A DNA stretch of 63,283 bases, filler included, from Hyphochytrium catenoides (taxonomy: Eukaryota; Protista; Hyphochytriomycota), in NCBI GenBank assembly GCA_900088475.1. It is 5 parts of 5 records of this genome, joined end to end, with 100 filler letters (N's around TTAATTAATTAA, not from the genome) between each part and the next. Parts side by side here need not be neighbours in the genome. Positions count along the whole stretch, not along the records: positions 21,136 to 52,056 come from FLMG01000144.1; 4 more parts are not named here. The stretch is one strand, 5' to 3'. Shown piece by piece: positions 22,224 through 42,200 of the stretch. The notes beneath the pieces are model-generated. The model had not been told where the DNA came from. It made no database searches and saw nothing but the letters and a program-made list of their open reading frames with translations. A program made the translations under genes and the position numbers. Each line of letters opens with the position of its first letter. Positions within the stretch are counted from its first letter, which is position 1.

Positions 22224-25200
22224 TCACCACTTCATGCTATACTCTGTGGGAGGAGGTAAATATGCGACTTGGAGCCTCTCTTCCTTGGAATACCGCTTTC
22301 GAACAACATAAACAGTTGAGAACGGCGACTGAGAGTACATCAACTGCAGCTCCTTCATGCACTCCTGCAGGTCTGCCCACACATAGCGACTAGCCTTCTC
22401 CAGTTCTGGATTCTATAGAACCAGCAGGAGGATGACAAACCGAACGAGTCAGGACCATGTTAAACAAAGAAGAGAAAGGAGAAAGAGAACACGGTGTGAT
22501 TGGGTGCGTTAAAAAGTGGGGAGAGGTCGTCTTAATAACAGGTCTGAGTAATGAGGAAAAGTCACGTTTACAAAGCCTAGCAACGGTAACGCGACTAGAG
22601 ACTAACAGAAACCAAGGACGTAGAGCGACTAGAGGGGCTATCAAGACGGTAAGTAGGTCATTCTCGATAGGTCAAAGCAGACAGTCTAAGAAAGAAGCCC
22701 ATCGTCATTGTTTTCTTACCCAGCTGATTCTGCTTATGCAATACATTGAAAGAGAAACAACGCAGGTGGCCACCAGTGACGGCTTAAAGCGCAGGAACCG
22801 GTATTCCTGTAGGACGAGCTCGGAGAGATACTATTGACAAGAAATAGTGGTCAAGGCGAGGACACTGAGGCATCAAAAGTATCATTCGACGTACCAGGGC
22901 TAGCATTTGAGTCTGCTTAGTTAGTGGAGGCATCATTTCTTGGAATATGTGAACAAAATCTAAAACTGTGGACGACCAACAGTGACACCCAGTAACCGAT
23001 GAAAGAAATAGAAATAGATGGTCAGATAACGATTCTAGTACTCTGGCTATCAGTGTAACCAGATACCTGTGGGAGCAGCCAGCGAGAAGCCAAGAGAGTT
23101 AAGCAGAGTCTCCTCCATTGCTAGTACTTCGGGCGGTTTATAGACATTATCCGCGCACATCGCCAAATCGTCTACTCCAATGTAGGAGACATCCTCGCAT
23201 TTTGAGGCCACGTGGAGACAGGTAGCTCCCAAGAGTTGGAACTTCTTTTTTGGGACCTGAATAGCATATTAGCGACAAGAAGCCCAAGAAAAAGCTACAG
23301 GATATGACCGACGCGGAACTCTACGGTCAAGTGGCGTCTGACCACAACGGAGGGCAAGCCACGAAGACTGAGAAAGACAACGGGGAAAGGAAGAAGATGT
23401 GAAGGTGCTTTGACAGTGAGGTCGCTATGTGACGTTACCTGTACTTTCTCTAGAAACCTATCTGTATAGCTCACTGCTAAAAAAGCGGTCCGAAGACACA
23501 TCTCGAAAACATCAACCACTGACAACATCCAGAAGCGGTTAGCCAGAGAGAAACAGTCAGAATGAGGTGAGATTTGATGTATTGTGGCTGAGCAAGTATC
23601 AGACGGTTTACCTTCAATAAGCCAATCTACAAGCATTGATCGGTGGATGGGCCGAAGGTTCTTCTGTTTGCTGTGTCAGATTATGCAGGTGTTAGTGCGG
23701 GCCCCAAGTAAAAGCTACCTTTTACAAGTGAGTTATAGAATCCCTTTGTCTACGGGTCTTACTTAAGATAGCTCATCACTGGACAAAGCTTCTGTTCTGA
23801 GTCTCTAAGGTAGGCATGATATAGCTCAATCTGCTCTGAAATGCCTGAATGAGCTGGGGGTAGACGAGGGTAGCATGAGCAAATTTGTCTCGGCAACGGG
23901 GATGCAGGATTTGCTAAGGACAGCGTAACGCAATCATGCGGATGCACCTACTGCAAGGTAGATAACCCCATATTGATTTTTGCATTCTCTACCTTGTAGT
24001 TTTAGAAAGGGCTTCGAAAGGTCGATGGGGATACAAGGAAAAAGTGGTCGATACAGCGCTGTTTCAGAAGTAAAGAACGGATGTCGCAGTGCTTCTTCGG
24101 CGGTGATCCGCCTGTCTGGATCATAGTTCAGCATCCGTTGCAATAGGTCGATACCGAGCTCACTTAAAGTAGGAAATAAGCGCTTGAGAGGTCGGGGACC
24201 CCAGTTTGGAAACTTGAAATTGCAATTTGGCAGGTTTTTAAAGCCTGGCCAGGTCTGCTCCGTTGGCGTGGAAAGTTTGCTAAATATCTGAAAGAGCTGT
24301 AGAGCGGAGAAAAAACCAGAAGCATTAGAAGCAAGGCCTAGACTTCTTTCATCACCCGTGGTATCTCCCTTTATCAGAGCTTTCCGACCCCCTTGCCGTT
24401 TTTCAGCGTTGTGCCCTTTTCCGTCAGCTTACCTGGTCCACCTCTGATATTCCAGTGAAAAGTGGCCTGCCTTGTGCCATCTCAGCAAAAATGCATCCCA
24501 CGGACCAGATATCTACCGCTGGAGAGTAACCCCTGACTCCCATAAGAATCTCAGGTGGTCGATACCAAAGTGTGACAACCTCTGTGGTGTAGACTCGCCG
24601 CGGATAGCCTGTCGCTCTAACTAATGCAAAGTCTGATACTAAGAGCTTCGCGTCGTCTGCAAGAGGAAAGAATGCCCGTCAGAAGCAATACCTGATACGA
24701 AGGCAAGACGACGATAGGTGTATGACAAAAAGCGGAAACAGGAACGGTCAAAACACGGAAGAATCACGGTGCTAAAAGCAAGCTGAACAAAGGTGGACGG
24801 ACGGGAAGAGTGACGTTACTGCCAGACCTAGAGAGCCATCATGCCCCTTTTTGATAAGTAGGTGCTTAGGTTTCAGGTTTCGGTGCAGTATTCCCCGTCG
24901 ATGGCAGTAAGCTATCGCATCTAATAGCTGATGAAGGAGCTTTCTCGCCTATATACAAATCATTGCTTAGCGCCTGGCCCGATCAATAGTGGGCAGCTAA
25001 ATATAACGGATTCTTACCTGTCTCTCTGGTAACACGGTGCCACCATTGGGGTCATTTCCGGGGTTGACGATATCATGCAAGGTGTGGTCTATGAATGGAA
25101 AAAACACGTGAAGCTTGTTGCTTGACAAGTTCACCATTTCTAACGACGCGATGTGTCGATGGTTCATTCCTTCCAACACCGCCAACTCTCGAAGCATGTA

Positions 25201-26566
25201 GTAAGGCACGCCTTCACCTGTTGGATACACTCGTGCCCGCTTCATAGCTAGAATACGCCCTGTCGATCGTTCTCTGACCCTGAAGCAGACGCCCTCTGTG
25301 CCAGTATTTTTGATACCAAAATTTTGAAAGTTTCTCCAGTTAACGCCTCCATCTGGATCCATCCAAGATACTCGATTCCAGAGCGACGGGATGTTGTGTA
25401 GCTCTCTCCACTTCTTGGAAACGAGCATCCTGTTCACCTGGTCATCTACATCCACCAAGTACTCAAGGATGTGTAGGAGGAGAACGGTCGGAAGATCCTC
25501 AATGTGGAAGCCGATTGGCTGCTTATCCAGGGCATCATCTTCTTCATGGTCACTCTTCGTGCTTGAGGCAGTGGGCGATGTGATTTTTATCTCGCGCCTG
25601 AATGCCTTGACATTCCGGTAGCCTTCTCTTTCCCGGACGTCAATTGAGAGCATATCCTCTCCATGGGGAAATGTCTGCTGGGTTAAAGCCGCTCCATCGT
25701 CCGAGCCGGAAGCGGCTTCTAAGATACGCTTTCGCTTCCCTAAAATATGTGCAGGAAGCTCATCATCTGTGAAAGGAGTATTAGAGGTTTAGGTTTAAGT
25801 GCAATCTGGATGAGTCCACTCACAGGGTGTTGAGATTGCATCTGGATATGGCTCCTCCTTAGCACACGAATCTGTCACTTGCGTGCTTTCGAGGTCAGAC
25901 GCTTTCTCCTCTCTCTGTGGATAGTCTGCCATTGCCTCCACGTCTTCAGCCCACTCGGATGTGGAGTCTGCAGCCAGAAGGCTGAGAAATCAGTCCAGCA
26001 ACCACCCAGAGACACGATGTGAGGTCAACAGCGTTCTAGAATCTGACAGGTGATAAAGGTCGACCAGACCACAGAAAACTTAGAGCCTGAAGGACTCCCT
26101 GTTCCCTGCTATAAAGCTATAAAGTTGCCGCCATCTGCTTTCGTCGGCCTCTTCTGCACGCAATAGGCTTCAGCAGGAGCTTCGTATGGAATCAGATTAC
26201 TTTGTCTGAAGAAGATGCTGTCGAGAAGATGCTGTCGGCCGCGCGCTCGGCTGGTTTGCTCTGAAGGTGTTTCAACCAAAGCAGCCAGCCTTCTTCACTT
26301 CGCTACAAATGTTCTTCTCCCTTACTAATCCCTTTTGATAACGAAGCCGTGTCTCATCCACTCTGTCTTGCGCTGTGGTTCCGTTTAGGCTCTAAAGTTT
26401 AAGGCTTATGACACTGCTATCTATCTCAATCCACTCTGTCCCTCACCTACGTTAAAATTTGATCATAAATGACAAGAGAAGGAGAAATCGCCAGTTTCTG
26501 CTCTCCCTGGCTTCTAAAATTGTCCTCACACAGTGTGAAGCCAAACACACAACTCACAGGCTTCAT
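22224..26566 (-). CDS. F-box + CDK-like (probable pseudokinase) + A/B-type cyclin fusion protein (multi-exon; start approximate)
   Basis: F-box: [42 protein letters not shown] (about 25380-25503). CDK domain: [74 protein letters not shown]|[24 protein letters not shown] phase-1 intron 23992-23854 links in frame to the cyclin: [62 protein letters not shown]…[25 protein letters not shown]…MKW*. Confidence 0.9.
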
Positions 26567-27070: not shown

Positions 27071-28779
27071 ATGATAGTAGGCGGCGATGACGACAATGGA
27101 TTTCGGCCATCAGCCCAAGTTTATAAGGATGACGAGGAGAATGAGAAAGGTGACCAGCCGCTCGCCAACGAAGAGACGCTTTATAATGAGGGGGTACAAA
27201 AATGCTATACCCTGAAAGAGCTATGTATCAGGTCCATGGTGAGAGGATGGCGCTCGAGCTTCGAGTCAATGCTTCACTGGTAGGTGCCACGACAGCCGTA
27301 ATTTGACTCCTTGTAGGAGTAATAGACTCTTTTCAGGGTGCCGGACGAGCTGGTCAACGAGATACTGGAGGATATGTCACAGAGCCATCAGGTAGTGCTT
27401 ACAAGTCCCGTGATCATGGGAAAGCATTATCTGACAGCACGCATTCTGGTTCCACGTTCCACAGGTTACAGAGCCGGTGGTTTGTGCGATGACAAGGTCC
27501 TCCCGCCAAGCTCTAAAGCTTTCTAAGTGCTATATGGTGCGCAAATCTATCATCAGGCAAATTCCCTATCATAGTCCAAAGTTGGTAAGCTCCTAGAGCA
27601 CAACCACGCACTTCCTCTTATTGCTAAGGTCTCTCCGACAGCTATCCTTAGATCTTACCGGCTGCCAACAAGTCAATAATACTGTCGTAAGAAGCATCCT
27701 TCAAGGATGCGGGTCGCTAAGGAATCTATCCCTCGCTGGTTGCTCCCGTATCACCGACTCGGCGTTCGATCCTGAGCAGTCGCCCTTCTATCCACTGGCA
27801 GCATTGCTGTCATTGCAGGTGGCATTGGTTCTGCTTGTGTAGATCGCCCTCTTGCTCAATCCTTTTGCTGCAGTTCCTTGACCTTAGTGGTTGCACCCAA
27901 ATCAATGGAGAGATGATGCACATTATGGTTAAAAACTGCAGATCTCTGGAATACGTGAATCTATCAAAGTGCAAGGTACAATCACAAGCCCTTATTAATA
28001 GTGTTTCCGCTTTGCTTAGTTTTGGCCATTTATGTTCCTACAGAAGCTCCGAGGTGACTGCCTGCGGGTGTTCCTACAGTCTATGCGGAGTCTCAAGAGA
28101 TTAGACCTAGCTGCAACGGTGAGTCCAGCTTAAAACGTTCTGCAGTTCTGAGGTACTGACGCATGTGCAGCGTGATGTCATGGCCAGTGCCATTCTCGAG
28201 TGCTCGGAAGGGAGCAGTTTCCAAAGCCCATTTAATAACCGGCTTGAGGAGCTAGATCTTAGTCACTGTACTCTATCGGACGCCAGCGTTTCGCAGCTCT
28301 CGGTGGTTTTGCCACGTCTGACAACCCTGAACTTACGATGGAACGTAAAGATCACCGACTCGGGCTTAGCAGGTCTTGCCCAGAACTGCCATGACTTACG
28401 AGTTCTCGATATTCGTGGGTGCAATGAAATAACGGACGTAGGTGTGACAGCTCTCTGCAGTGCTTGTCCGTTCTTGACAGAGTAAGTGGCCTCTCGAGAC
28501 GACTTCAAGATAGGTAGACTGATGCATTGTGTGAACTGCAGGCTCAACCTATCATTCTGTATGAAGCTCACAAACACAGTAGTTGATCATCTCAGCAGAA
28601 GTTGTCGTCAACTAGAAGTGATCTCTTTCTCCTGGTGCCACGATATTAACCCACGGCGTATAGTCAGATTTGCCAGAGAAGTTCCGACACTGCGGATGAT
28701 CATAGTCCATAATGAGCACTCGTGGCCCAAAGAGCTCCGCCAGGAGTTAGTTGACTTAGGGATAGTAATTGGCCTCTAG
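27071..28779 (+). CDS. Cys-containing leucine-rich-repeat protein (FBXL/AMN1/Rad7-like) with possible BC-box
   Basis: Many LxxLxLxxCxxITD repeats (LRNLSLAGCSRITDS, LEELDLSHCTLSDAS, LRVLDIRGCNEITDVG). The N-terminal TLKELCIRSM fits the [STP]LxxxCxxxΦ BC-box pattern. Confidence 0.85.
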
Positions 28780-33148: not shown

Positions 33149-36100
33149 ATGCAGGTCTTGGTACAGTTTCGGCGGACGCATTGCTTAGATTTTGATGGCG
33201 ATAGGGTCGATGTGGGCGATGTCCTTAGCCGCCTACAGGTATGCGCGAGATTGTTATTCTATTGTACGGCTTACTTTAACAGGGTTGTCTAGGATCTCGA
33301 GGGTATTCCAGCAGATCAATGCCTTCTCTACGCCAATGGACAGCGACTGCTACCAGGTGTACCCGTTCCCACTGCTCCGTCAATTGTCAGAGCCTCTCTT
33401 CGAGGTCTGCTTGGAGGGAAAGGAGGGTAGGGCTAGAAAAGCGTCAAGAAAGATGAACGAAGTCTGTTCTGATACATTCTTTTTAGCTTTGGTGCCATGC
33501 TGAGGAGCATGGGAAAGGCAGCAGGCAAGAAGACGACGAACTTTGGTGCTTGCCGAGACCTCAATGGCAGAAGGTGGGTGAGGGAGCATTTTCCCCTCAG
33601 GCCAAGCAGCCTACTGATCCTCAATATGGGCCCGATTGTAGGCTGCGGCATGTGAACGATGAGATTCGACTGCAGAAGTGGCTGGAGCAGAAGGAGGAGC
33701 GCGAACGGGCAAAGCGCGATGGACTTGACCTAGCAGATCTGTAGGTTCCCCTTGTGTCTGGATGCAATCTTAGTCTTGGCCTGAACCTTTGCCATTATGT
33801 AGCGCGGAAGAGCCAACTCCAAGTGGCATCGAGGGCTGGTATTTGAGCTTACCCTCCTGGTAATATAGCCGCTCGTAGTGAACGGAGAAGCCCACGGTAC
33901 TAATAGGACAAATATTTAGGGCTGAGGGATTCAAAGGTGGACAGAAGAAGAGTTATATGAAGTCGAGAAAGAAGACCTCACTGTGCAAGAACTGGGTGGA
34001 GGCGCGGGCTCACCGACAGCGTAAGTGAACCGAGGGCTTGCTTTGCAATACTGCAGTAAGTTCTACATAAGAAAGTCTGATCCCCTTACACAGCTCCCCC
34101 AAAGGCTCCCAAGTGGTGGGGTTGTCCGCGTGGTCGAGACTGTGACTTCGCACATGGCGAAGACGAGTTAAGGGGTAAGGGATTGATGGAGCTTAAGGCC
34201 AAACGAAAGGACGAACAGGCAGCGAAGAGAGAGAAAAGGTAAAGAAACTTCTACGTATCCCTCTTCCTGCCACGTTCTTATTATTAGTCGCCGCACCGCC
34301 TGTGATTCTTGTCTCCCTTCTCTCTCTTGCTGATCATCAGCCTAAGCCCCATCTTTTGCCCTCTGCAGCCTCAATGAATACACTGATTATCAGTCGTCCA
34401 TCTCCAACAGCTTAGATGACGCTATAGCGGAAGGCCTAAAGTAGGTATTGTAAATTGGTGGAGAGCAGCCAAGTAGCGCGGAGGTCGTTGAACAGAAAAC
34501 GAGGAGAGTGGAGGAGGTGTGGACCAGTGCTAGAAAGTTGATGCAACAAAGGCCTATAGGGCTAAATATGAGAGCATAAGTTGCGCGGTTGACAGCAAGA
34601 TTGACAGTAGCAAACGTGGAGACGTAGGGGCAGGGGTCATTGATCATGGTCAATAAGACTAAAATATTCCAACAGGAGAGAGCGTGAGCGTAAGCGTCGG
34701 CGATTGGAAGATAAAGAGCTGGAACAGGTAAAACGACTGTGTGCTCCATCTTTCTCCTTTACCCATTATCATCATTGCGTAGCTGGTTCAAGGACGGGTC
34801 TTCCTCACTGTCGACAATTCTCCCTACGCTTTCTCATGTTTATCATTGATGAACCACGGTCTCTTTCACGATCATGAACTTTATTGATTTACAGATGACT
34901 TGTTTGGAAGTGTATTAAGCNNNNNNNNNNNNNNNNNNNNNNNNNNNNNNNNNNNNNNNNNNNNNNTCTCTCCTACCTGCTTTGTTCTCAATGTGGTTTG
35001 CAGTCGTCAGTCCTTCCTGTCGACATCACTCTTAAATCTAAGGGAATCAGGCGGACCACCCCATACCTTCGACCGGTGGTTGGAGACCTAATGATAGCAG
35101 AGGCAGGTGAAGTGGAGGGCGGTACTGACTTTGGGACTGTCGTCGTTCGGTCTTGCCGCTTGGTAAGCGGAAAGTGGTACTATGAGGTAGAGCTGCTGAC
35201 GGCTGGTGTTATGCAAATCGGCTGGGCGAACACACAGTTCCAGGTACCGTCCATTCCTTCTAAGCAAGCTCTTGATATATGTTCCTTGTGGAACTAACGA
35301 CTCCCAAAATGTCATAACGCTCTCCGTCCAGGGAGATGAGGACTCAGGCGACGGTGTCGGAGACGACTTGAATTCTTGGGCCTTCGACGGCGTCCGCCAA
35401 CAAAAGTGGAACGGAGAGTCTTCTGACTACGGTGAGACTTGGCGGGCGGGAGACATTGTGGGCTGTTTATTAGACTTGGACGCAGGATCTATGCGCTTCT
35501 CCCTCAACGGCAAGGACTTAGGAGTGGCGTTTGATAATATTCAGTTTTCCCTTCCTCCATCTTCGCCTTCAACGAGGCAAGCTTCTGGGAGCGTCATGCC
35601 CTCTTCGGTCGGAGGAGCTGGGGAAGACCTGGGTATGTTTCCAGCTGTTAGTCTAGAGGAAGGCGAAGCAGTCAGAGTGAATCTAGGGGAAAGACCCTTT
35701 ATGTATGGCCCTCCAGCGGGCGAGAGAGCATTTGGTCAAGTGCGAGGAGTTTGGGATGCTCTTCCGCAACACCTTCGGGCCATTTCTGCCACTGGCACTG
35801 CGACAGTCGACGTCGACTACGAACAAGAAGAGGGTGGCATGGCGCTGAGCACAGTAGAGACAGATATGAAAAAGAAGAAGACACCAGGAGCAGATGGAGA
35901 ACAACAGGACGGAACGCCAGTGTCAAAGGAGATAAAGGGTAAAAGTGAGAAAGAGATAACCAAGCAGGATGCAGCAAAACATGCGCCTAAACCTGCAAAA
36001 AGTGAGACGAACGAGGAACATGCCCGGTCAAAACCTTCAATAGATCTAGAATCGGCAACACAATCGACTCTAGAGGCCCTCGGCTTGGAGCTTCTAAAAG

Positions 36101-36306
36101 AGGAACTCATGGCTCGGGGCCTGAAGTGCGGGTGAGGATATTATGGCTTATGTAGTAGAGACAAGACAAACAGAGCGACAAATGGGTATCTAACATTGCT
36201 CTTCACCAGGGGTACGCTACAAGAGCGGGCACAGAGACTCCTGGCTGTCAAAGGGAAGAAGCCCGAACAAATTGATCCCAAACTGCGCGCCAAAGGCAGT
36301 AAATAG
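33149..36306 (+). CDS. SDE2: SDE2 homolog (ubiquitin-fold, GG|KGG cleavage site, C-terminal SAP-like domain) with inserted CCCH zinc finger and SPRY domain
   Basis: MQVLVQF…LRGLLGGKG|GFGAMLRSMG…TTNFGACRDLNGRRLRHVN; KTSLCKNW…CPRGRDCDFAHGEDEL (CCCH); SGKWYYEVELLTAGVMQIGWA…GDGVGDDLNSWAFDG…GDIVGCLLDLD…FPAVSL…NLGERPFMY (SPRY); LEALGLELLKEELMARGLKCG|GTLQERAQRLLAVKG. There is an assembly gap at 34921-34966 within the gene. Confidence 0.9.
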
Positions 36307-36329: not shown

Positions 36330-38366
36330 TTAGTACCTTCCTTCAATTAAGGCATCTGCCACTTGCTCTACGTTGTGTGGAAAGAGAATCGCGTTTAGAA
36401 GTCTATCCGTTGTCAGCGGTTCTGCCTTTCTCCTCTTTCTAGGCTTTGTCTTGCTATCTGTTGTTTCTTCTCCTTCGTCTGCCCTTTGCATTGCTCTCGC
36501 TTGACTGACTGCCCTTCGCAAGCAGCTTAGATTCTCCTTGTGAGGGTAGACTTCCTCTCCTGGGTTAATCCAATCATCGAGCTCCTCTTCATCACCCGTA
36601 CACTCCACTTCGTAGCCCTTGAGGGCCGTGACAATGGTCCTTACAATCGCTTCTTTAACTCTCTCTCTGTCATCACTCTTTGCCTCCCACCAACAATTGA
36701 CAGAGAGAGATGCTGCCCTGCACTGAGCCAAATGCCACCAATGCCGAGGCAAGAACAACACATCACCTTCTTTCAAGTCAATGACGGTGGGAGGGTGGGC
36801 TTGACAGAACAGAGGGAAGAGTGATGAATCAATAGGAAATCTTGGGTCTAACTGGCTGTAGACACTACTCTCCTCATAAGGTACCCGGGTTGGATAGAGA
36901 AAGGGTGTGTCTTCGGGAGCAAAGAGAAGCCATCGCTTCGTTCCTTTCACCTGGAGGATCAGGTTGGAGCCGTAAGTATCGTAGTGCAGAGGAGTGAAGG
37001 CGCCTGCAGAGCCCAGCCACAGAGTCGCGTCGAGGAGAGTTCTGTCTCCTGGAACTCCAAGCTCTCTCCACGGCGTATAAATCTTGAGCTCTTCTTTAAG
37101 ACCTTCAGACGAATCCGAGAGAAGCTCCTTGATAGCAAGCAGAGTTCGCATGAGTGACAATGTCCCCATATCGCCCCCTTAACATCTATAAAGTATGCGC
37201 ACTCCTTATTCTAGGTGGATGAGCCCTAGTCTTCCTATCTCTAGGGCTTCCTCAGTCTATGGAGCTTACCGCAAAGTGCTTGTAGCTGCAATAGCCCCAA
37301 TGTCGAGGACGTTTCCTCTTCTTCCCTGCCGCAAGTGTTCCGAGTGCCTGGTCTCTGTCAGCCCCCTCAGGTAGGGCAACCCCGTTCGGACCTATAGCAC
37401 AAAGCAGTTCAGTGAGGATTCACTCTTCTTCGTCACCAATCGAGAGCAGGAGGCCCAAGGGGAAGAGGAAACCAAGAGCCACAGCGGGCTGAAACGAGAG
37501 CCCAGTTTTGCCCAGCAACCGCAATCTGTTGCTTCTGGCTAGCATCACCCCTTCCCTATTCTGAACCTTGCATCCTGCTCTGTTAAATTCCTTGATTCCG
37601 CTACCAGGACAGGTCCCTCTCTCCTACAAGGCTAGCTCTGGACCGGCAGCGTCCTTATCCGCACACGTGCACCTATTTCTGCGAACCGTCATCCCCTAAC
37701 CTCTTTGTTCCTTAAGTCTTTGGTGGTCGCACCTATATGGGGCTGCTGCTCGCTCAGTTGTGTTGTCACTCCTGCGTTATCGCTTGAGGACAGAACTGGG
37801 CTTGCTTTCCCTTCCCCTTTGTCTTTTGCTTGCGCCTTCTTGTAGCGTTCTCCATCTGCCTCCTCCGCTGTCAATGCTTCAACATGCTGGATCCAAGCTG
37901 CAAACTCTCCGAGACTCACCTCGCGCCAGTAGCACTCATGCTCCCATCCATGACACTCTTTTGCTTTATGTTCCTTCCTCATCCTCTCATTTTCCCGCCC
38001 GATTCCCAAGCCCAAGGCCGCCTGCCCACCTTCCTCATGATCTCCTCCTGGTTTGCTCTCTGTCTGAAGAAAGCGCGCAGAGGTGCGAAGGTGCCCTAGC
38101 TGCTCTTGAAACAGCACCAGGTCCTTCCATTTCAAGACTGGCCAATGCCCAACGCCGCCGGAAAGCATCACAGGTTGAGTGCCATCAGCTAGAGCTGCCA
38201 GCCAGTCAGAGCGCCACGTCTCGCAGGAGGAAGCATCAATTTGGATCACCGATGGCGACAGGCGAGCGCTATCCCCTCTGGATAAGTCCTTCTCCATCAC
38301 CAGCCACCCTTTGTTGGTCCTGCGTACGAGCTCTCCGTTTCTAACTAAGGCTGCTCTCCTTTCCAT
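36330..38366 (-). CDS. JmjC/cupin 2-oxoglutarate oxygenase, HSPBAP1-like
   Basis: PVMLSGGVGHWPVLKW; LWLGSAGAFTPLHYDTYGSNLILQVKGTKRWLLFAPEDTPFLYPTRVPYEESSVYS; LKEGDVLFLPRHWWH (HxD…H triad); ERVKEAIVR. The LYPTRxPYEESSV stretch is characteristic of HSPBAP1. Confidence 0.88.
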
Positions 38367-39200: not shown

Positions 39201-42200
39201 CTAGGGTCTGCCGGTTCCATAATTGCCACTTTGTTGCCTGGAGTGTCTCTGAGGATAAGAGGCTTGCGGAGACGGGAAGAAATTATGTGAAGGCCCAGGG
39301 GGGAACGGCATGGGCATCCCTGGGTGCCCAAAATGGGGAGGGGGAGGGAAATGATAGGGAGGAATGGGGCGGGCATGAGGATGCAGATGGGCGTTCGGAG
39401 GTGGAGGGGGAGGAAAGAACATCGGGTGCGGAGGTCCAGGTGCAACTGCCGATCCAGCACTTTGTATGGGAAGACCAGTTATTGGATCAATAGCCATGCG
39501 CTCCACAGTAGCAGGAGAAGGCCCAGTAAAGAGAGATAGAAGGTTGACTGCAGCCTCAGTCTGGGACGTAGTAGAAGGTGATTTGTTGACAGCGATCGGT
39601 GCCGCGCTTTCCCTCATCTCCTCGGCGTCGGCCTCCACGGTCTGCTGCGGAATCAGGTTCAACTTTGTCGCGGGTGCTGAAACAGATGGTTTCTGAGCTC
39701 GACGAAGGAGCTCCTCTTCCGTGTTAGAAACAGATGGCTTCTGAGCTCGACGAAGGAGCTCCTCTTCCGTGTTAGAAACAGATGGCTTCTGAGCTCTACG
39801 AAGGAGCTCCTCTTCCGTTAGCATCTGCGGTAGACGTGAGGGTTGGGACTGATGGCTTTCTAACTTGGTGCCGAAGAGTGAGGAAGCGAAGTGGTCGAAC
39901 GAAAAGCCTGAGGGTTTAGTGTCCTGATGACTCTCCTCGCGAATTGTCCGTTGATCTTCGGTCACCTCTCTGGTCGAATCGCTACGCTTCGTCTTCTTAG
40001 CTTCTGTTTCCTCTTCTTCGTTCGTAAGGGGATGAGATGGAAGCCCTTCGTCCCCGTTGGCATGTGCATTCTCAAGACGAATGGAGTCTATCGCATCTAA
40101 AAGAGGATTTCTATCAGTCAGATCAAAGCTGCCACCTGACTCCAAAATAGACCGTCGGGGAAGGGGATCAGCGGGGGAGGAGAGAGGAGAATATTGCGGA
40201 AGAGCAGAGAGGAGGCGTGAGGTGCTCGCCGATCTTCCTTTGGGGTTGAATAGGACGATATCTTCTTCTTCGTCCAATATGGCTCTGGCACCGACGGCAA
40301 AGTGTCCAATGTGAGGTTTCACCCCATTGTCTAATACGTCTTCTTCCTTGTGCCTTTCCGGCACCTCCTCTGTCTGGACACTAAGCACCTCCTCAGCTGT
40401 CTTTACGGTATAGATGAACTCCTCATCGTCACTTTCTCTTCCGTCCCTTAAAGCCCTAAGTTGATCCTTCCTGTTTCTGTAGGTCTGCAATCTCTCTTTC
40501 ATGAAGGAACGATATTGCCTGAGCTTCTGAGCTTTGATGAAGGGAACTTGTCTCAATCTTTGAGCAAACTGCTGTTGCAAGCCCAAAGTTTGTATATACT
40601 TCACAGCGACATGGAATTGATCATCCTGCAGGGAAAAAGGGAAGGAACGCCAAGAAGAGACCGCGTCGTCGTTGAGCAGAAGAAAACCTCGAAGACTCGA
40701 ACAGATAGCAATAGTCCCAAGATCATGATCGCAGCACAGCCCATATATCTGCTTACGGAGCCGTACAACTCCCCTCTCTGCCTACGGAGCCGTACAACTC
40801 CTCTCTCTTGCTCTCTACCTAAATAAAGCTGTGCCCCGAACCCTTTGGTCCCACTTTCAGTGAATCCTCGGTCCCTTACCTCAAAAGCCTGCTCAATTAG
40901 TTCTCGGGGGCTAAACTCGGCTTCACAGCTTAATCCAAGCTTGATTGCATACTTGATTGCCTTGTAATGCTCCTTGCATGCGATCAGTGTCCGCACGAAA
41001 CTCCTTAGGAGCTCCACGTGCTTGTGAGGGGCCTCCAGGTTCTTGTGTTGGAACTCATGCATCGATTTTAAGGTGTGGTGCGCAGTTTTGGGTGCTATTC
41101 CCATTTCCCGGATGTAAGTTAGTGCCGTCAAGAAGTCATGGGAGTCTATGACGCTTTGCACAATCACTTCTTTAGGGAAAAGCTCCTTAAGCTTGGAATC
41201 GTTGTTAATGTACTTAAGAGCCGTGTCCCACTCTCGGTTACGAAGCATGTGTTGGATGAGAATGCGTGGAGGAATGTGATCCTCTAAGTGCAGGGCCTAC
41301 GCGGGAGAGTGAGAGGCTTTAGACAACAAGATAACCAGAGAACGTCGAGGGCACAAGCACGGGAGTGAAAGTTGTACACGGCAGTGCGAGAGCCAACTAC
41401 ATCCCTGCATCTGGGCGGCGTGCAGACCGATGTATTAGACTAATAGAAGAGGTGTGAGAGTAGAAGCCGCAATGGACGTAAAAAGCGTTTCTGAAGGATG
41501 GAACCTCGCAAATTCGCCAGCGCCTTACTATTTACCTTCACTTGCTTGTACGCTGCAGACCACTGCTTCTCGTGTACCATGGCCTTCACGACATCTATTG
41601 GTGGGAAGATAGACGCTAGGTTGAACTCGTCAATGTATTTAAGCGCCAGCGTAAACTGCTTGGCCCTAAGAATAGCTTGGACTAGGGTCTGAGGGGTCCA
41701 AGAGGGCTTCCTAGTTGCAGAAGACGTTGAAATGGTGGCGCCAAAACCTTCAATGAACTCCTTCGCATACTTGACGGCGAGATTAAACTGATTGCTCATA
41801 ACTAGGCGGGATATCAAAAGGTTGACAAGCTGCTGGTTGCCTTGCAACTTGAAGTCACGAATCCAGCGCCCTGTAAGGTCAAACATTTTATCCTCTAAAG
41901 CAAGTTTGACAAGGTCTGCTAGCTGATACTTTCCGGCCAGAAAAGTACTGCGACGGAGCAATGTCGCAGCTTCATCATATTGTTTGCCCTGCAATGTAAG
42001 ACGGAGCCTATTCTCCTGCTCATCTGGTGCTAAGGAGTTGATATCGGTCTCAGCTTGTGGCTTTCTACGGATATGAGGAGAGACGTAACGGCTAGGAGAG
42101 CTGTGCCGATCCTTTAAAGGCTTATTTCCCTCTGATGACACTGACTGAGGATTCGAGGCCCGGGTTCTACTAGCTGAGGTGTCTCGAGAGGCTTGAGGGC

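What the first reader, a model, noticed from the sequence alone, without database searches (positions are those of the whole stretch)
24433..25310. The fused CDK looks like a pseudokinase with a built-in 'Y15E' inhibitory mimic
Seen: the catalytic loop is [10 protein letters not shown] (24877-24885) instead of HRDLKPQNLL, losing both the catalytic Asp and the Mg-binding Asn. DFG is DFA (24625-24633). The Gly-loop is NTGTEGVC versus CDK1 GEGTYGVV, so G11 is N and the Wee1 site Y15 is Glu. PSTAIRE is PYYMLRE. Scaffold features are kept: beta3 Lys (LAMK), alphaC Glu, T-loop Thr ([11 protein letters not shown]), and the CKS-binding GDSEIDQ-like GISEVDQ. Inference: several targeted active-site changes in an otherwise clean, stop-free domain indicate selection for a non-catalytic docking or decoy role rather than decay.
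Basis: partly seen in the sequence, partly recalled or inferred. Interest (0 to 1): 0.85.

Follow-up and report, generated by a model that had tools for sequence, protein, structure and literature searches.

The report
F-box–dead CDK–cyclin fusion gene

Summary
They lie in an 11-exon gene (12 with a putative 5' exon) encoding F-box, CDK1/2-like kinase domain, then cyclin A-like N and C folds. The spliced 711-aa model aligns end to end at about 60% identity with oomycete orthologs and shares six intron positions with them.

The changes are family hallmarks, not private mutations or errors. Across 63-97 homologs:
- HRN, the following His (in place of the Mg-binding Asn) and DFA are invariant or nearly so.
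- Glu replaces Tyr15 in 95 of 96.
- PYYMLRE replaces PSTAIRE.
- The beta3 Lys, alphaC Glu, DFG Asp, T-loop Thr and its Arg triad are kept.

dN/dS for the kinase domain between two oomycete orthologs is about 0.01. An AlphaFold model of an ortholog is one rigid body (pTM 0.85).

The CDK-cyclin fusion with Asp-to-Asn was described in Phytophthora infestans in 2010. Loss of the Tyr15 motif was noted in Stentor in 2017. The F-box appears only in database names. I read it as a non-catalytic CDK-cyclin module acting as an SCF substrate receptor; that step is inferred. The "Y15E inhibitory mimic" label is untested. It is a new member of a known kind, of moderate interest.

The parts
22224..25653 (-). 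Core gene model: 11 exons (25653-25018, 24948-24828, 24656-24433, 24296-23993, 23913-23763, 23670-23612, 23518-23439, 23256-23067, 22965-22895, 22830-22720, 22412-22224; stop TGA at 22226-22224), 711 aa
   Evidence: All ten introns are GT..AG, 64-307 nt. The model aligns over aa 2-711 to oomycete orthologs at about 60% identity. Six intron positions are shared with the P. cactorum and Bremia orthologs.
25824..25932 (-). Putative extra 5' exon (ATG at 25932), joined through a 57-nt GTGAGT..CACAG intron to an acceptor at 25766; gives a 785-aa protein
   Evidence: Homology to ortholog N-termini continues upstream of ATG 25653 as far as 25767. The splice phase fits. There is no RNA evidence, so this exon is tentative.
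25369..25503 (-). F-box (model aa 51-95)
   Evidence: Pfam F-box-like PF12937 E 4.2e-11 and F-box PF00646 E 7.9e-5. The F-box columns are filled in at least 85 of 97 family members.
24090..25332 (-). CDK1/2-like pseudokinase domain (model aa 108-396), interrupted by three introns
   Evidence: Pfam Pkinase hits on all four exon pieces. The ortholog's domain matches CDK3, CDK1 and CDK2 in the PDB at E 4e-73.
25285..25308 (-). Degenerate Gly loop NTGTEGVC: first Gly lost, Tyr15 position is Glu (25296-25294), Val18 position is Cys
   Evidence: Family composition: Gly 95/96, Thr 92/96, Glu 95/96, Gly 96/96, Cys 88/96; no Gly at the first position among the five commonest residues, which cover 84 of 96.
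25240..25251 (-). beta3 strand LAMK with the ATP-anchoring Lys retained
   Evidence: Ala 95/96 and Lys 94/96 in the family.
25186..25206 (-). PYYMLRE, the PSTAIRE-helix equivalent; Arg and Glu kept
   Evidence: Tyr 93/94, Tyr 90/94, Met 89/94, Arg 94/94, Glu 91/94.
24856..24885 (-). Catalytic loop [10 protein letters not shown]: catalytic Asp replaced by Asn (24879-24877), Mg-binding Asn replaced by His (24864-24862)
   Evidence: HRN, Lys and His are invariant in the 63 homologs of A1. His 96/97. Top-ranked hits read HRN; HRD appears only from rank 68.
24625..24633 (-). DFA in place of DFG; the Asp is retained
   Evidence: Asp 97/97, Phe 97/97, Ala 94/97; invariant in A1.
24550..24591 (-). Activation loop [14 protein letters not shown] with the Thr160-equivalent (24588-24586)
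   Evidence: Thr 94/95. The three Arg that hold phospho-Thr160 in CDK2 (in PYYMLR, HRN and LVR) are 94/94, 97/97 and 96/96.
24433..24453 (-). GISEVDQ, the GDSEIDQ equivalent, at the end of exon 3
   Evidence: Gly 94/95, Glu 90/95, Asp 86/95, Gln 92/95, followed by conserved LFQIF.
22227..23833 (-). Cyclin A-like domain (Cyclin_N plus Cyclin_C, model aa 456-711) with [12 protein letters not shown] (23645-23517, split by intron 6) and ASKCEDV (23208-23188)
   Evidence: Pfam Cyclin_N E 6e-16 and Cyclin_C E 6e-8 and 1e-6. The ortholog's domain matches cyclin A2 at E 7e-42, then B1. The MRAIL-patch residues and the Lys/Glu CDK-contact residues are conserved.

Best explanation
The window holds an intact, spliced gene for a single-chain F-box, CDK1/2-like pseudokinase and cyclin A-like protein. 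It is the counterpart of a family found throughout oomycetes and in other stramenopiles and alveolates.

Shown: a fixed, family-wide set of substitutions has remodelled the kinase active site. The catalytic Asp is Asn, the Mg-binding Asn is His, DFG is DFA, the first Gly-loop Gly is lost, and Tyr15 is Glu. The residues that hold a CDK in its cyclin-bound shape are kept: the Lys-Glu pair, the DFG Asp, the T-loop Thr with its Arg triad, and the Arg and Glu of the PSTAIRE-equivalent helix.

Inferred, with structural support: the domain no longer phosphorylates substrates. It is permanently clasped by its own cyclin as a rigid CDK-cyclin look-alike.

Inferred only: the F-box plugs this module into Skp1-Cul1. 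The cyclin's RxL-type docking patch, and perhaps the CKS-binding face of the kinase lobe, then serve as the substrate-recognition part of an SCF ubiquitin ligase. Targets would be proteins that normally bind CDK-cyclin, such as CDK inhibitors or RxL-bearing substrates. In function this would be a one-polypeptide analogue of cyclin F, or of the Skp2-CDK2-cyclin A assembly.
For: Gene and fusion:
- The spliced model, Pfam domains and end-to-end alignment support one F-box/kinase/cyclin gene.
- Six intron positions are shared with orthologs.

Conservation:
- The altered motifs are invariant or nearly so in 63-97 homologs, and the scaffold residues are kept.
- The family is one clade (support 100) on a long stem away from CDK1/CDK3.
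- dN/dS between P. cactorum and Bremia is 0.012 for the kinase domain, 0.007 for the cyclin and 0.077 for the F-box.

Structure:
- The AlphaFold2 model of the Saprolegnia ortholog has pLDDT 85.9 and pTM 0.85 over 715 residues. That requires a fixed arrangement of F-box, kinase and cyclin.
- Its kinase part best matches cyclin- or Speedy-bound CDK2/CDK3 chains in all 50 listed Foldseek hits, TM 0.91-0.94.
- The cyclin Lys/Glu CDK-contact residues and the MRAIL-type patch are conserved, and the F-box columns are filled in at least 85 of 97.

Literature:
- Judelson and Ah-Fong 2010 confirmed such fusions by RT-PCR and predicted inactivity from the Asp-to-Asn change.
Against: - No biochemical data exist for any member.
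- No RNA runs were listed for this genome, so expression, the 5' exon and the weak donor of intron 2 are unconfirmed.
- Asp-to-Asn kinases such as HER3 keep weak activity (from my own knowledge). The invariant Lys, Glu and DFG Asp could mean nucleotide binding or residual catalysis.
It was not measured.
- Skp1, Cul1 and CKS binding and the substrates are all untested.
- The F-box evolves faster than the other two domains.
- The structure was predicted for a 60%-identical ortholog, not for the window protein.
Confidence: 0.6

Rival explanations
1. Stoichiometric decoy without ligase function. The dead CDK-cyclin module soaks up CDK regulators (CDK inhibitors, CKS, CAK, Wee1 or Cdc25-type enzymes) or competes with active CDKs for RxL substrates. 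The F-box only ties its own abundance to SCF or Skp1, or acts in a non-SCF Skp1 complex.
For: The same conserved docking surfaces fit this reading. Judelson and Ah-Fong proposed that the cyclin part might regulate the protein's stability. The F-box is under weaker constraint than the kinase or cyclin domain (dN/dS 0.077 against about 0.01).
Against: The F-box is retained across the whole family and is rigidly packed onto the kinase N-lobe in the model (pLDDT above 90 from about residue 80). That looks like a built-in geometry for presenting a bound partner to a ligase. Canonical F-box proteins are substrate receptors.
Confidence: 0.2
2. An atypical but active enzyme. The fixed Asn/His/Ala/Glu set forms a non-canonical catalytic or nucleotide-dependent switch, comparable to HER3-like weak phosphotransfer, CASK-like Mg-independent activity, or an ATP-binding conformational switch.
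For: The replacement residues are themselves invariant rather than drifting. The ATP-anchoring Lys, the alphaC Glu, the DFG Asp, the catalytic-loop Lys and the T-loop Thr are all kept.
Against: The catalytic base, the Mg-binding Asn, the DFG Gly and the first Gly of the Gly loop are all changed at once. Two independent kinome studies judged the domain inactive. The retained residues are also those needed to keep the cyclin-bound fold.
Confidence: 0.12
3. The Glu at the Tyr15 position works as a constitutive mimic of Wee1 phosphorylation that keeps an otherwise competent kinase switched off.
For: Glu is present at that position in 95 of 96 family members, and the neighbouring Thr14 is kept in 92 of 96. 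The Stentor member also lacks the GxGTYG Tyr.
Against: The domain also lacks the catalytic Asp, the Mg-binding Asn and the DFG Gly in every member, so there is no activity left to inhibit. Conservation of the Glu fits a structural role in a closed, remodelled cleft at least as well.
Confidence: 0.07
4. Private decay, sequencing error or gene-model artefact in this genome.
For: No reads could be laid on the region; no runs were listed.
Against: The same residues occur in dozens of independent genomes and transcriptomes. The frame is intact, all ten introns are GT..AG, and six lie at conserved positions. The model aligns end to end with orthologs.
Confidence: 0.01

Closest known systems
CDKs with integral cyclin domains of Phytophthora infestans (for example PITG_21617; Judelson and Ah-Fong 2010, PMC3019232) and the Stentor coeruleus CDC2-cyclin protein SteCoe_2757 (bioRxiv 10.1101/168187)
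   Same: The CDK-like domain is followed by Cyclin_N and Cyclin_C in one polypeptide. The catalytic Asp is Asn in subdomain VIb. In Stentor the GxGTYG Tyr is also lost. A P. infestans T30-4 family member (P0186) is 49% identical over 637 residues to the window model.
   Different: Neither paper mentions an F-box (0 occurrences). The annotated P. infestans protein P0186 starts inside the F-box region (its residue 3 aligns to model aa 77), so it looks N-terminally truncated. The His, DFA, Glu/Cys Gly-loop and PYYMLRE signatures were not described in the passages I read. The window gene branches outside the crown oomycetes.
Metazoan cyclin F (FBXO1), the SCF substrate receptor. UniProt automatically names many family members 'Cyclin-F'.
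   Same: An N-terminal F-box plus a cyclin box with a conserved RxL-type docking patch. Cyclin F is a cyclin used for ubiquitin-ligase targeting rather than kinase activation (PMC6792013, PMC12232547).
   Different: Cyclin F has no kinase domain and binds no CDK. Here a complete CDK-like domain sits between the F-box and the cyclin. The cyclin domain's best solved relatives are cyclin A2 and then B1; no cyclin F chain is among the 60 listed. Common descent was not tested.
SKP1-SKP2-CKS1 bound to CDK2-cyclin A-p27 (PMC10318019, PMC7895821)
   Same: An F-box protein, a CDK2-type kinase and an A-type cyclin form one assembly that presents a CDK-cyclin-bound protein to an SCF ligase. The window protein joins these three kinds of part covalently.
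   Different: In that complex CDK2 is active and phosphorylates p27 to create the degron. SKP2 recognises it through its LRR domain together with CKS1. Here the kinase is predicted dead and there is no LRR. The resemblance is functional analogy only.
Canonical CDK1, CDK2 and CDK3
   Same: They are the closest solved sequences (E 4e-73) and folds (TM 0.91-0.94, about 41% identity). The T-loop, Arg triad, GxSEIDQ segment and CMGC core are kept.
   Different: The GxGxxG first Gly, Tyr15, HRD Asp, Asn132 and DFG Gly are all replaced, and PSTAIRE reads PYYMLRE. The family forms a separate clade on a long stem.

Membership tests
CDK-cyclin fusion pseudokinases (Judelson and Ah-Fong 2010) | A CDK-like kinase domain and Cyclin_N plus Cyclin_C in one polypeptide | tested here: met
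   The spliced model carries Pfam Pkinase, Cyclin_N and Cyclin_C and aligns end to end with fusion orthologs.
CDK-cyclin fusion pseudokinases (Judelson and Ah-Fong 2010) | Catalytic Asp of subdomain VIb replaced by Asn | tested here: met
   HRN at 24885-24877, invariant in the family.
CDK-cyclin fusion pseudokinases (Judelson and Ah-Fong 2010) | Homology to the P. infestans members, inside one clade apart from ordinary CDKs | tested here: met
   49-53% identity to P. infestans proteins P0186 and P0184. The family clade has support 100, and the window gene lies within it as sister to the oomycete sequences.
CDK-cyclin fusion pseudokinases (Judelson and Ah-Fong 2010) | A single transcript spanning both domains (RT-PCR in P. 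infestans) | not testable with these tools
   No RNA runs were listed for this sequence. Support is indirect: conserved intron positions and an uninterrupted alignment across the junctions.
Pseudokinase (lacks at least one of the beta3 Lys, HRD Asp, DFG Asp) | Loss of the HRD catalytic Asp | tested here: met
   Asn replaces Asp. The beta3 Lys and DFG Asp are retained.
Pseudokinase (lacks at least one of the beta3 Lys, HRD Asp, DFG Asp) | Absence of phosphotransfer activity | not testable with these tools
   Needs an in vitro kinase assay.
F-box proteins / SCF substrate receptors | An F-box motif | tested here: met
   PF12937 E 4.2e-11 and PF00646 E 7.9e-5, both above their curated cut-offs. 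The motif is conserved in the family.
F-box proteins / SCF substrate receptors | Binds Skp1, assembles with Cul1-Rbx1 and delivers substrates | not testable with these tools
   Needs pull-down and ubiquitylation assays.
Cyclin F (FBXO1) | F-box followed by a cyclin box with no kinase domain; cyclin box of the cyclin F type | tested here: not met
   A full kinase domain lies between the F-box and the cyclin. The cyclin domain's nearest solved relatives are cyclin A2 and B1, not cyclin F. The UniProt name 'Cyclin-F' is automatic.
Active cell-cycle CDK (CDK1/2/3 type) | GxGxxG with Thr14-Tyr15, HRD, Asn132, DFG and PSTAIRE | tested here: not met
   The sequence reads NTGTEG, HRN, His, DFA and PYYMLRE.

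The most novel reading that the evidence does not exclude
Across stramenopiles and alveolates, a fossilised CDK-cyclin holoenzyme has been wired through an ancestral F-box into the SCF ligase as a substrate receptor. It would capture and destroy proteins that dock on CDK-cyclin, such as CDK inhibitors or RxL- and CKS-dependent substrates. That would make it a single-chain counterpart of the animal cyclin F and Skp2-CKS1-CDK2-cyclin A systems. The invariant Asn/His/Ala/Glu set would form a self-closed active site that locks the cyclin-bound shape without ATP.
Probability: 0.35. Interest if true: 0.7.

Novelty: new member of a known kind. Interest (0 to 1): 0.45.

Why it matters
The family appears strongly constrained (dN/dS about 0.01 in the one ortholog pair measured) and is present in all the oomycete plant and animal pathogens sampled, yet no function has been tested for any member.

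If the SCF-receptor reading is right, cell-cycle proteolysis in these lineages uses a dead CDK-cyclin pair as its recognition module. That would be a clear case of a pseudoenzyme repurposed as a ligase adaptor, and a lineage-restricted regulator.

For this scan the practical result is more modest. However, the core idea was published in 2010 and 2017.
- The F-box is ancestral to the family.
- The full invariant motif set (His, DFA, Glu/Cys Gly loop, PYYMLRE).
- The predicted rigid intramolecular CDK-cyclin body.

Tried and rejected
- Genome-contig scan with exon 1 found no relatives, which says nothing here because that collection holds only bacteria and archaea.
- The look-up of sequencing runs listed no RNA run. 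Splicing, expression and the base calls could not be checked on reads.
- A PDB sequence search with the F-box alone gave nothing significant; the best hit was FBXO44 at E 0.47.
- I searched upstream of the gene for the ortholog N-terminal 'ALGxTPR' motif and found none.
- I tested synteny with the RecA gene that flanks the Phytophthora and Bremia orthologs and found none in the window.
- The window's own spliced protein has no reference form, so I did not submit it to the fold or large search tools. I used exon pieces and the 60%-identical Saprolegnia ortholog P0156 instead.
- AlphaFold coordinates are not exposed, so I could not measure the kinase-cyclin interface or the contacts of the Tyr15-position Glu.
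- An alternative donor for intron 2 (GCA|GTAACG) was rejected. No in-frame acceptor fits it, and the chosen junction coincides with an intron position in the orthologs.
- The 'Batrachochytrium salamandrivorans' family member sits on an intron-less, gene-dense contig. I did not take it as proof of a fungal distribution.
Full report
**What is in the sequence**

The piece is eukaryotic DNA, about 48% G+C. On the minus strand between 25653 and 22224 I assembled an 11-exon gene whose ten introns all begin GT and end AG and are 64-307 nt long. Its 711-aa product carries three parts:
- an F-box (aa 51-95; Pfam PF12937, E 4e-11),
- a protein kinase domain (aa about 108-396, split over four exons),
- Cyclin_N plus Cyclin_C (aa about 456-711).

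HRN is at 24885-24877, DFA at 24633-24625, NTGTEGVC at 25308-25285, LAMK at 25251-25240, PYYMLRE at 25206-25186, [11 protein letters not shown] from 24591, and GISEVDQ at 24453-24433.

**Is the gene model right?**

The spliced protein aligns from residue 2 to 711 with orthologs from Lagenidium, Pythium, Aphanomyces, Saprolegnia, Phytophthora, Bremia and Albugo at 57-61% identity. I mapped the Phytophthora cactorum and Bremia lactucae orthologs onto their own DNA. Six of the window's ten introns lie at positions shared with them: model aa 212, 252/253, 478, 498, 588 and 649. This includes intron 2, whose donor is weak.

Homology to ortholog N-termini continues upstream of the first ATG as far as 25767. 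A further exon at 25932-25824, joined by a 57-nt intron, fits the splice phase and would give 785 aa. That part is tentative. No RNA runs were listed for this sequence, so nothing could be checked on reads.

**Are the active-site changes private or conserved?**

I searched 1.84 billion representative proteins with exon 1, which holds the F-box and the kinase N-lobe but neither HRN nor DFA. There were 72 hits below 1e-10. Every one of the top 67 with a recognisable catalytic loop reads HRN, almost always followed by DFA. Ordinary HRD/DFG kinases begin at rank 68.

In 63 homologs chosen by homology alone, the following are invariant: HRN, the loop Lys, the His at the Asn132 position, DFA, and the Gly-loop Glu-Gly. 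In a 97-sequence set:

| Feature | Conservation |
|---|---|
| Gly loop x-G-T-E-G-x-C | Glu at the Tyr15 position 95/96; Cys 88/96; first Gly absent from the five commonest residues (84/96) |
| PSTAIRE equivalent | P-Y-Y-M-L-R-E |
| beta3 Lys | 94/96 |
| alphaC Glu | 91/94 |
| DFG Asp | 97/97 |
| T-loop Thr | 94/95 |
| Three Arg that hold phospho-Thr160 in CDK2 | invariant |
| GDSEIDQ equivalent | G-[ILV]-[SC]-E-I-D-Q-L-F-Q-I-F |

So the replacement residues are themselves fixed. That is not what decay looks like.

**Selection**

Between P. cactorum and Bremia lactucae, Nei-Gojobori dN/dS is 0.012 for the kinase domain, 0.007 for the cyclin and 0.077 for the F-box. dS is 1.2-1.7, which is near saturation, so the ratios are approximate. 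The contrast between pN 0.016 and pS 0.63 is still clear. These values come from orthologs. No relative of the window species close enough for its own dN/dS was found.

**Family and placement**

The family carries F-box-like, Pkinase, Cyclin_N and Cyclin_C domains in all sampled oomycetes. NCBI names include 'cyclin-dependent kinase with F-box domain' for Achlya and Thraustotheca, and UniProt's automatic name is 'Cyclin-F'. Members also occur in brown-alga relatives, Tribonema, Phaeothamnion, Chrysoparadoxa, the labyrinthulid Hondaea, the dinoflagellate Durusdinium and many unnamed transcriptome proteins.

A maximum-likelihood tree puts all of them in one clade (support 100), on a stem of 0.88 changes per site away from CDK1/CDK3. 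The window gene is sister to the crown oomycetes plus one unnamed transcript. The source organism is therefore probably a deep-branching relative of oomycetes, and none of the homologs retrieved is more than about 63% identical to it.

By sequence against the PDB, the kinase part of the Saprolegnia ortholog is closest to CDK3, CDK1 and CDK2 (E 4e-73). Its cyclin part is closest to cyclin A2 (E 7e-42) and then B1. F-box columns are filled in at least 85 of the 97 members, so the F-box is ancestral to the family.

**Structure**

I folded the Saprolegnia diclina ortholog (P0156, 715 aa, 60% identical, co-linear with the window model) with the 63-sequence alignment. It gave mean pLDDT 85.9 and pTM 0.85; only the N-terminal 69 residues and a short linker are disordered. 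A pTM that high for a three-domain chain means the F-box, kinase and cyclin are predicted as one rigid body.

All 50 listed Foldseek matches of the model are CDK2 or CDK3 chains from cyclin- or Speedy-bound complexes (TM 0.91-0.94, about 41% identity). This suggests the cyclin-bound conformation. The cyclin residues that contact the CDK (the Lys in ASKCEDV, the Glu in MEE) and the MRAIL-type docking patch ([12 protein letters not shown], and the Gln in FQLLG) are conserved.

**How it most likely works**

Shown: this is a conserved, selected, intact fusion with a remodelled active site.

Inferred with good support: the kinase domain is catalytically dead or nearly so, and is held by its own cyclin.

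Inferred only: the F-box couples this module to Skp1-Cul1, so that the cyclin's RxL patch, and possibly a CKS bound to the kinase C-lobe, act as the substrate-recognition part of an SCF ligase. The CKS role of the GDSEIDQ segment rests on my own knowledge of the CDK2-CksHs1 structure and was not tested here. Functionally this resembles cyclin F (PMC6792013, PMC12232547) and the SKP1-SKP2-CKS1-CDK2-cyclin A-p27 assembly (PMC10318019, PMC7895821).

The last is weak because every member also lacks the catalytic Asp, the Mg-binding Asn and the DFG Gly, so nothing is left to inhibit. Private mutation or sequencing error is excluded by the orthologs.

**What was already known**

Judelson and Ah-Fong 2010 (PMC3019232) reported four P. 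infestans CDKs with integral cyclin domains and confirmed them by RT-PCR. All four have the Asp-to-Asn change. They found relatives in other oomycetes, Paramecium, Tetrahymena and Theileria annulata, and predicted inactivity.

The Stentor kinome preprint (10.1101/168187) noted a CDC2-cyclin protein that lacks the GxGTYG Tyr and catalytic residues. [quoted passage not shown]

Neither paper mentions an F-box. The annotated P. infestans protein P0186 starts inside the F-box region, which may explain the omission. Further searches found no functional study.

**Verdict**

The selection-not-decay inference is supported, and the inhibitory-mimic label is not. This is a new member of a known but functionally uncharacterised family. 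The F-box ancestry, the full invariant motif set and the rigid-body prediction are modest additions. Interest is moderate.

Noticed in passing
window 27071-28779, + strand: The divergently oriented neighbour is a multi-exon leucine-rich-repeat gene of the F-box/LRR (FBXL) type: Pfam LRR_6 E 5e-16, with a weak LRR_FBXL18 hit. Two predicted SCF-adaptor-type genes therefore lie head to head about 1.1 kb apart. This may be coincidence.
   Followed up: partly
window 35206-36135 (+) and 36330-37169 (-): One ORF carries a SPRY domain plus an SDE2 C-terminal-like segment. The adjacent ORF on the other strand is a Cupin_8/JmjC-type hydroxylase. Both look like ordinary eukaryotic genes.
   Followed up: partly
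window 39201-40604, - strand: A 467-aa ORF contains three tandem copies of an EEELLRRAQKPSVS-type repeat and a Pro-rich C-terminus. It was not analysed.
   Followed up: no
L003:6001-8067: The family member annotated as Batrachochytrium salamandrivorans (P0228) is intron-less and lies on a very gene-dense contig. In the tree it sits on a long branch with unnamed sequences, near labyrinthulid and dinoflagellate members. Either chytrids truly have the family, or the contig is foreign to that assembly.
   Followed up: partly
L001:1001-5326 and L002:1001-4253: The Phytophthora cactorum and Bremia orthologs have 8-10 introns, which by my recollection is unusually many for oomycete genes. Both are followed by a convergent RecA-type gene. 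That synteny is absent from the window.
   Followed up: yes
P0186 / P0184 (P. infestans) versus P0182 / P0183: Phytophthora has a second paralog clade of this family. The P. infestans models in it lack a Pfam F-box and begin at model aa 77, inside the F-box, whereas their P. nicotianae and P. capsici counterparts carry one. This points to N-terminally truncated annotation in P. infestans.
   Followed up: partly
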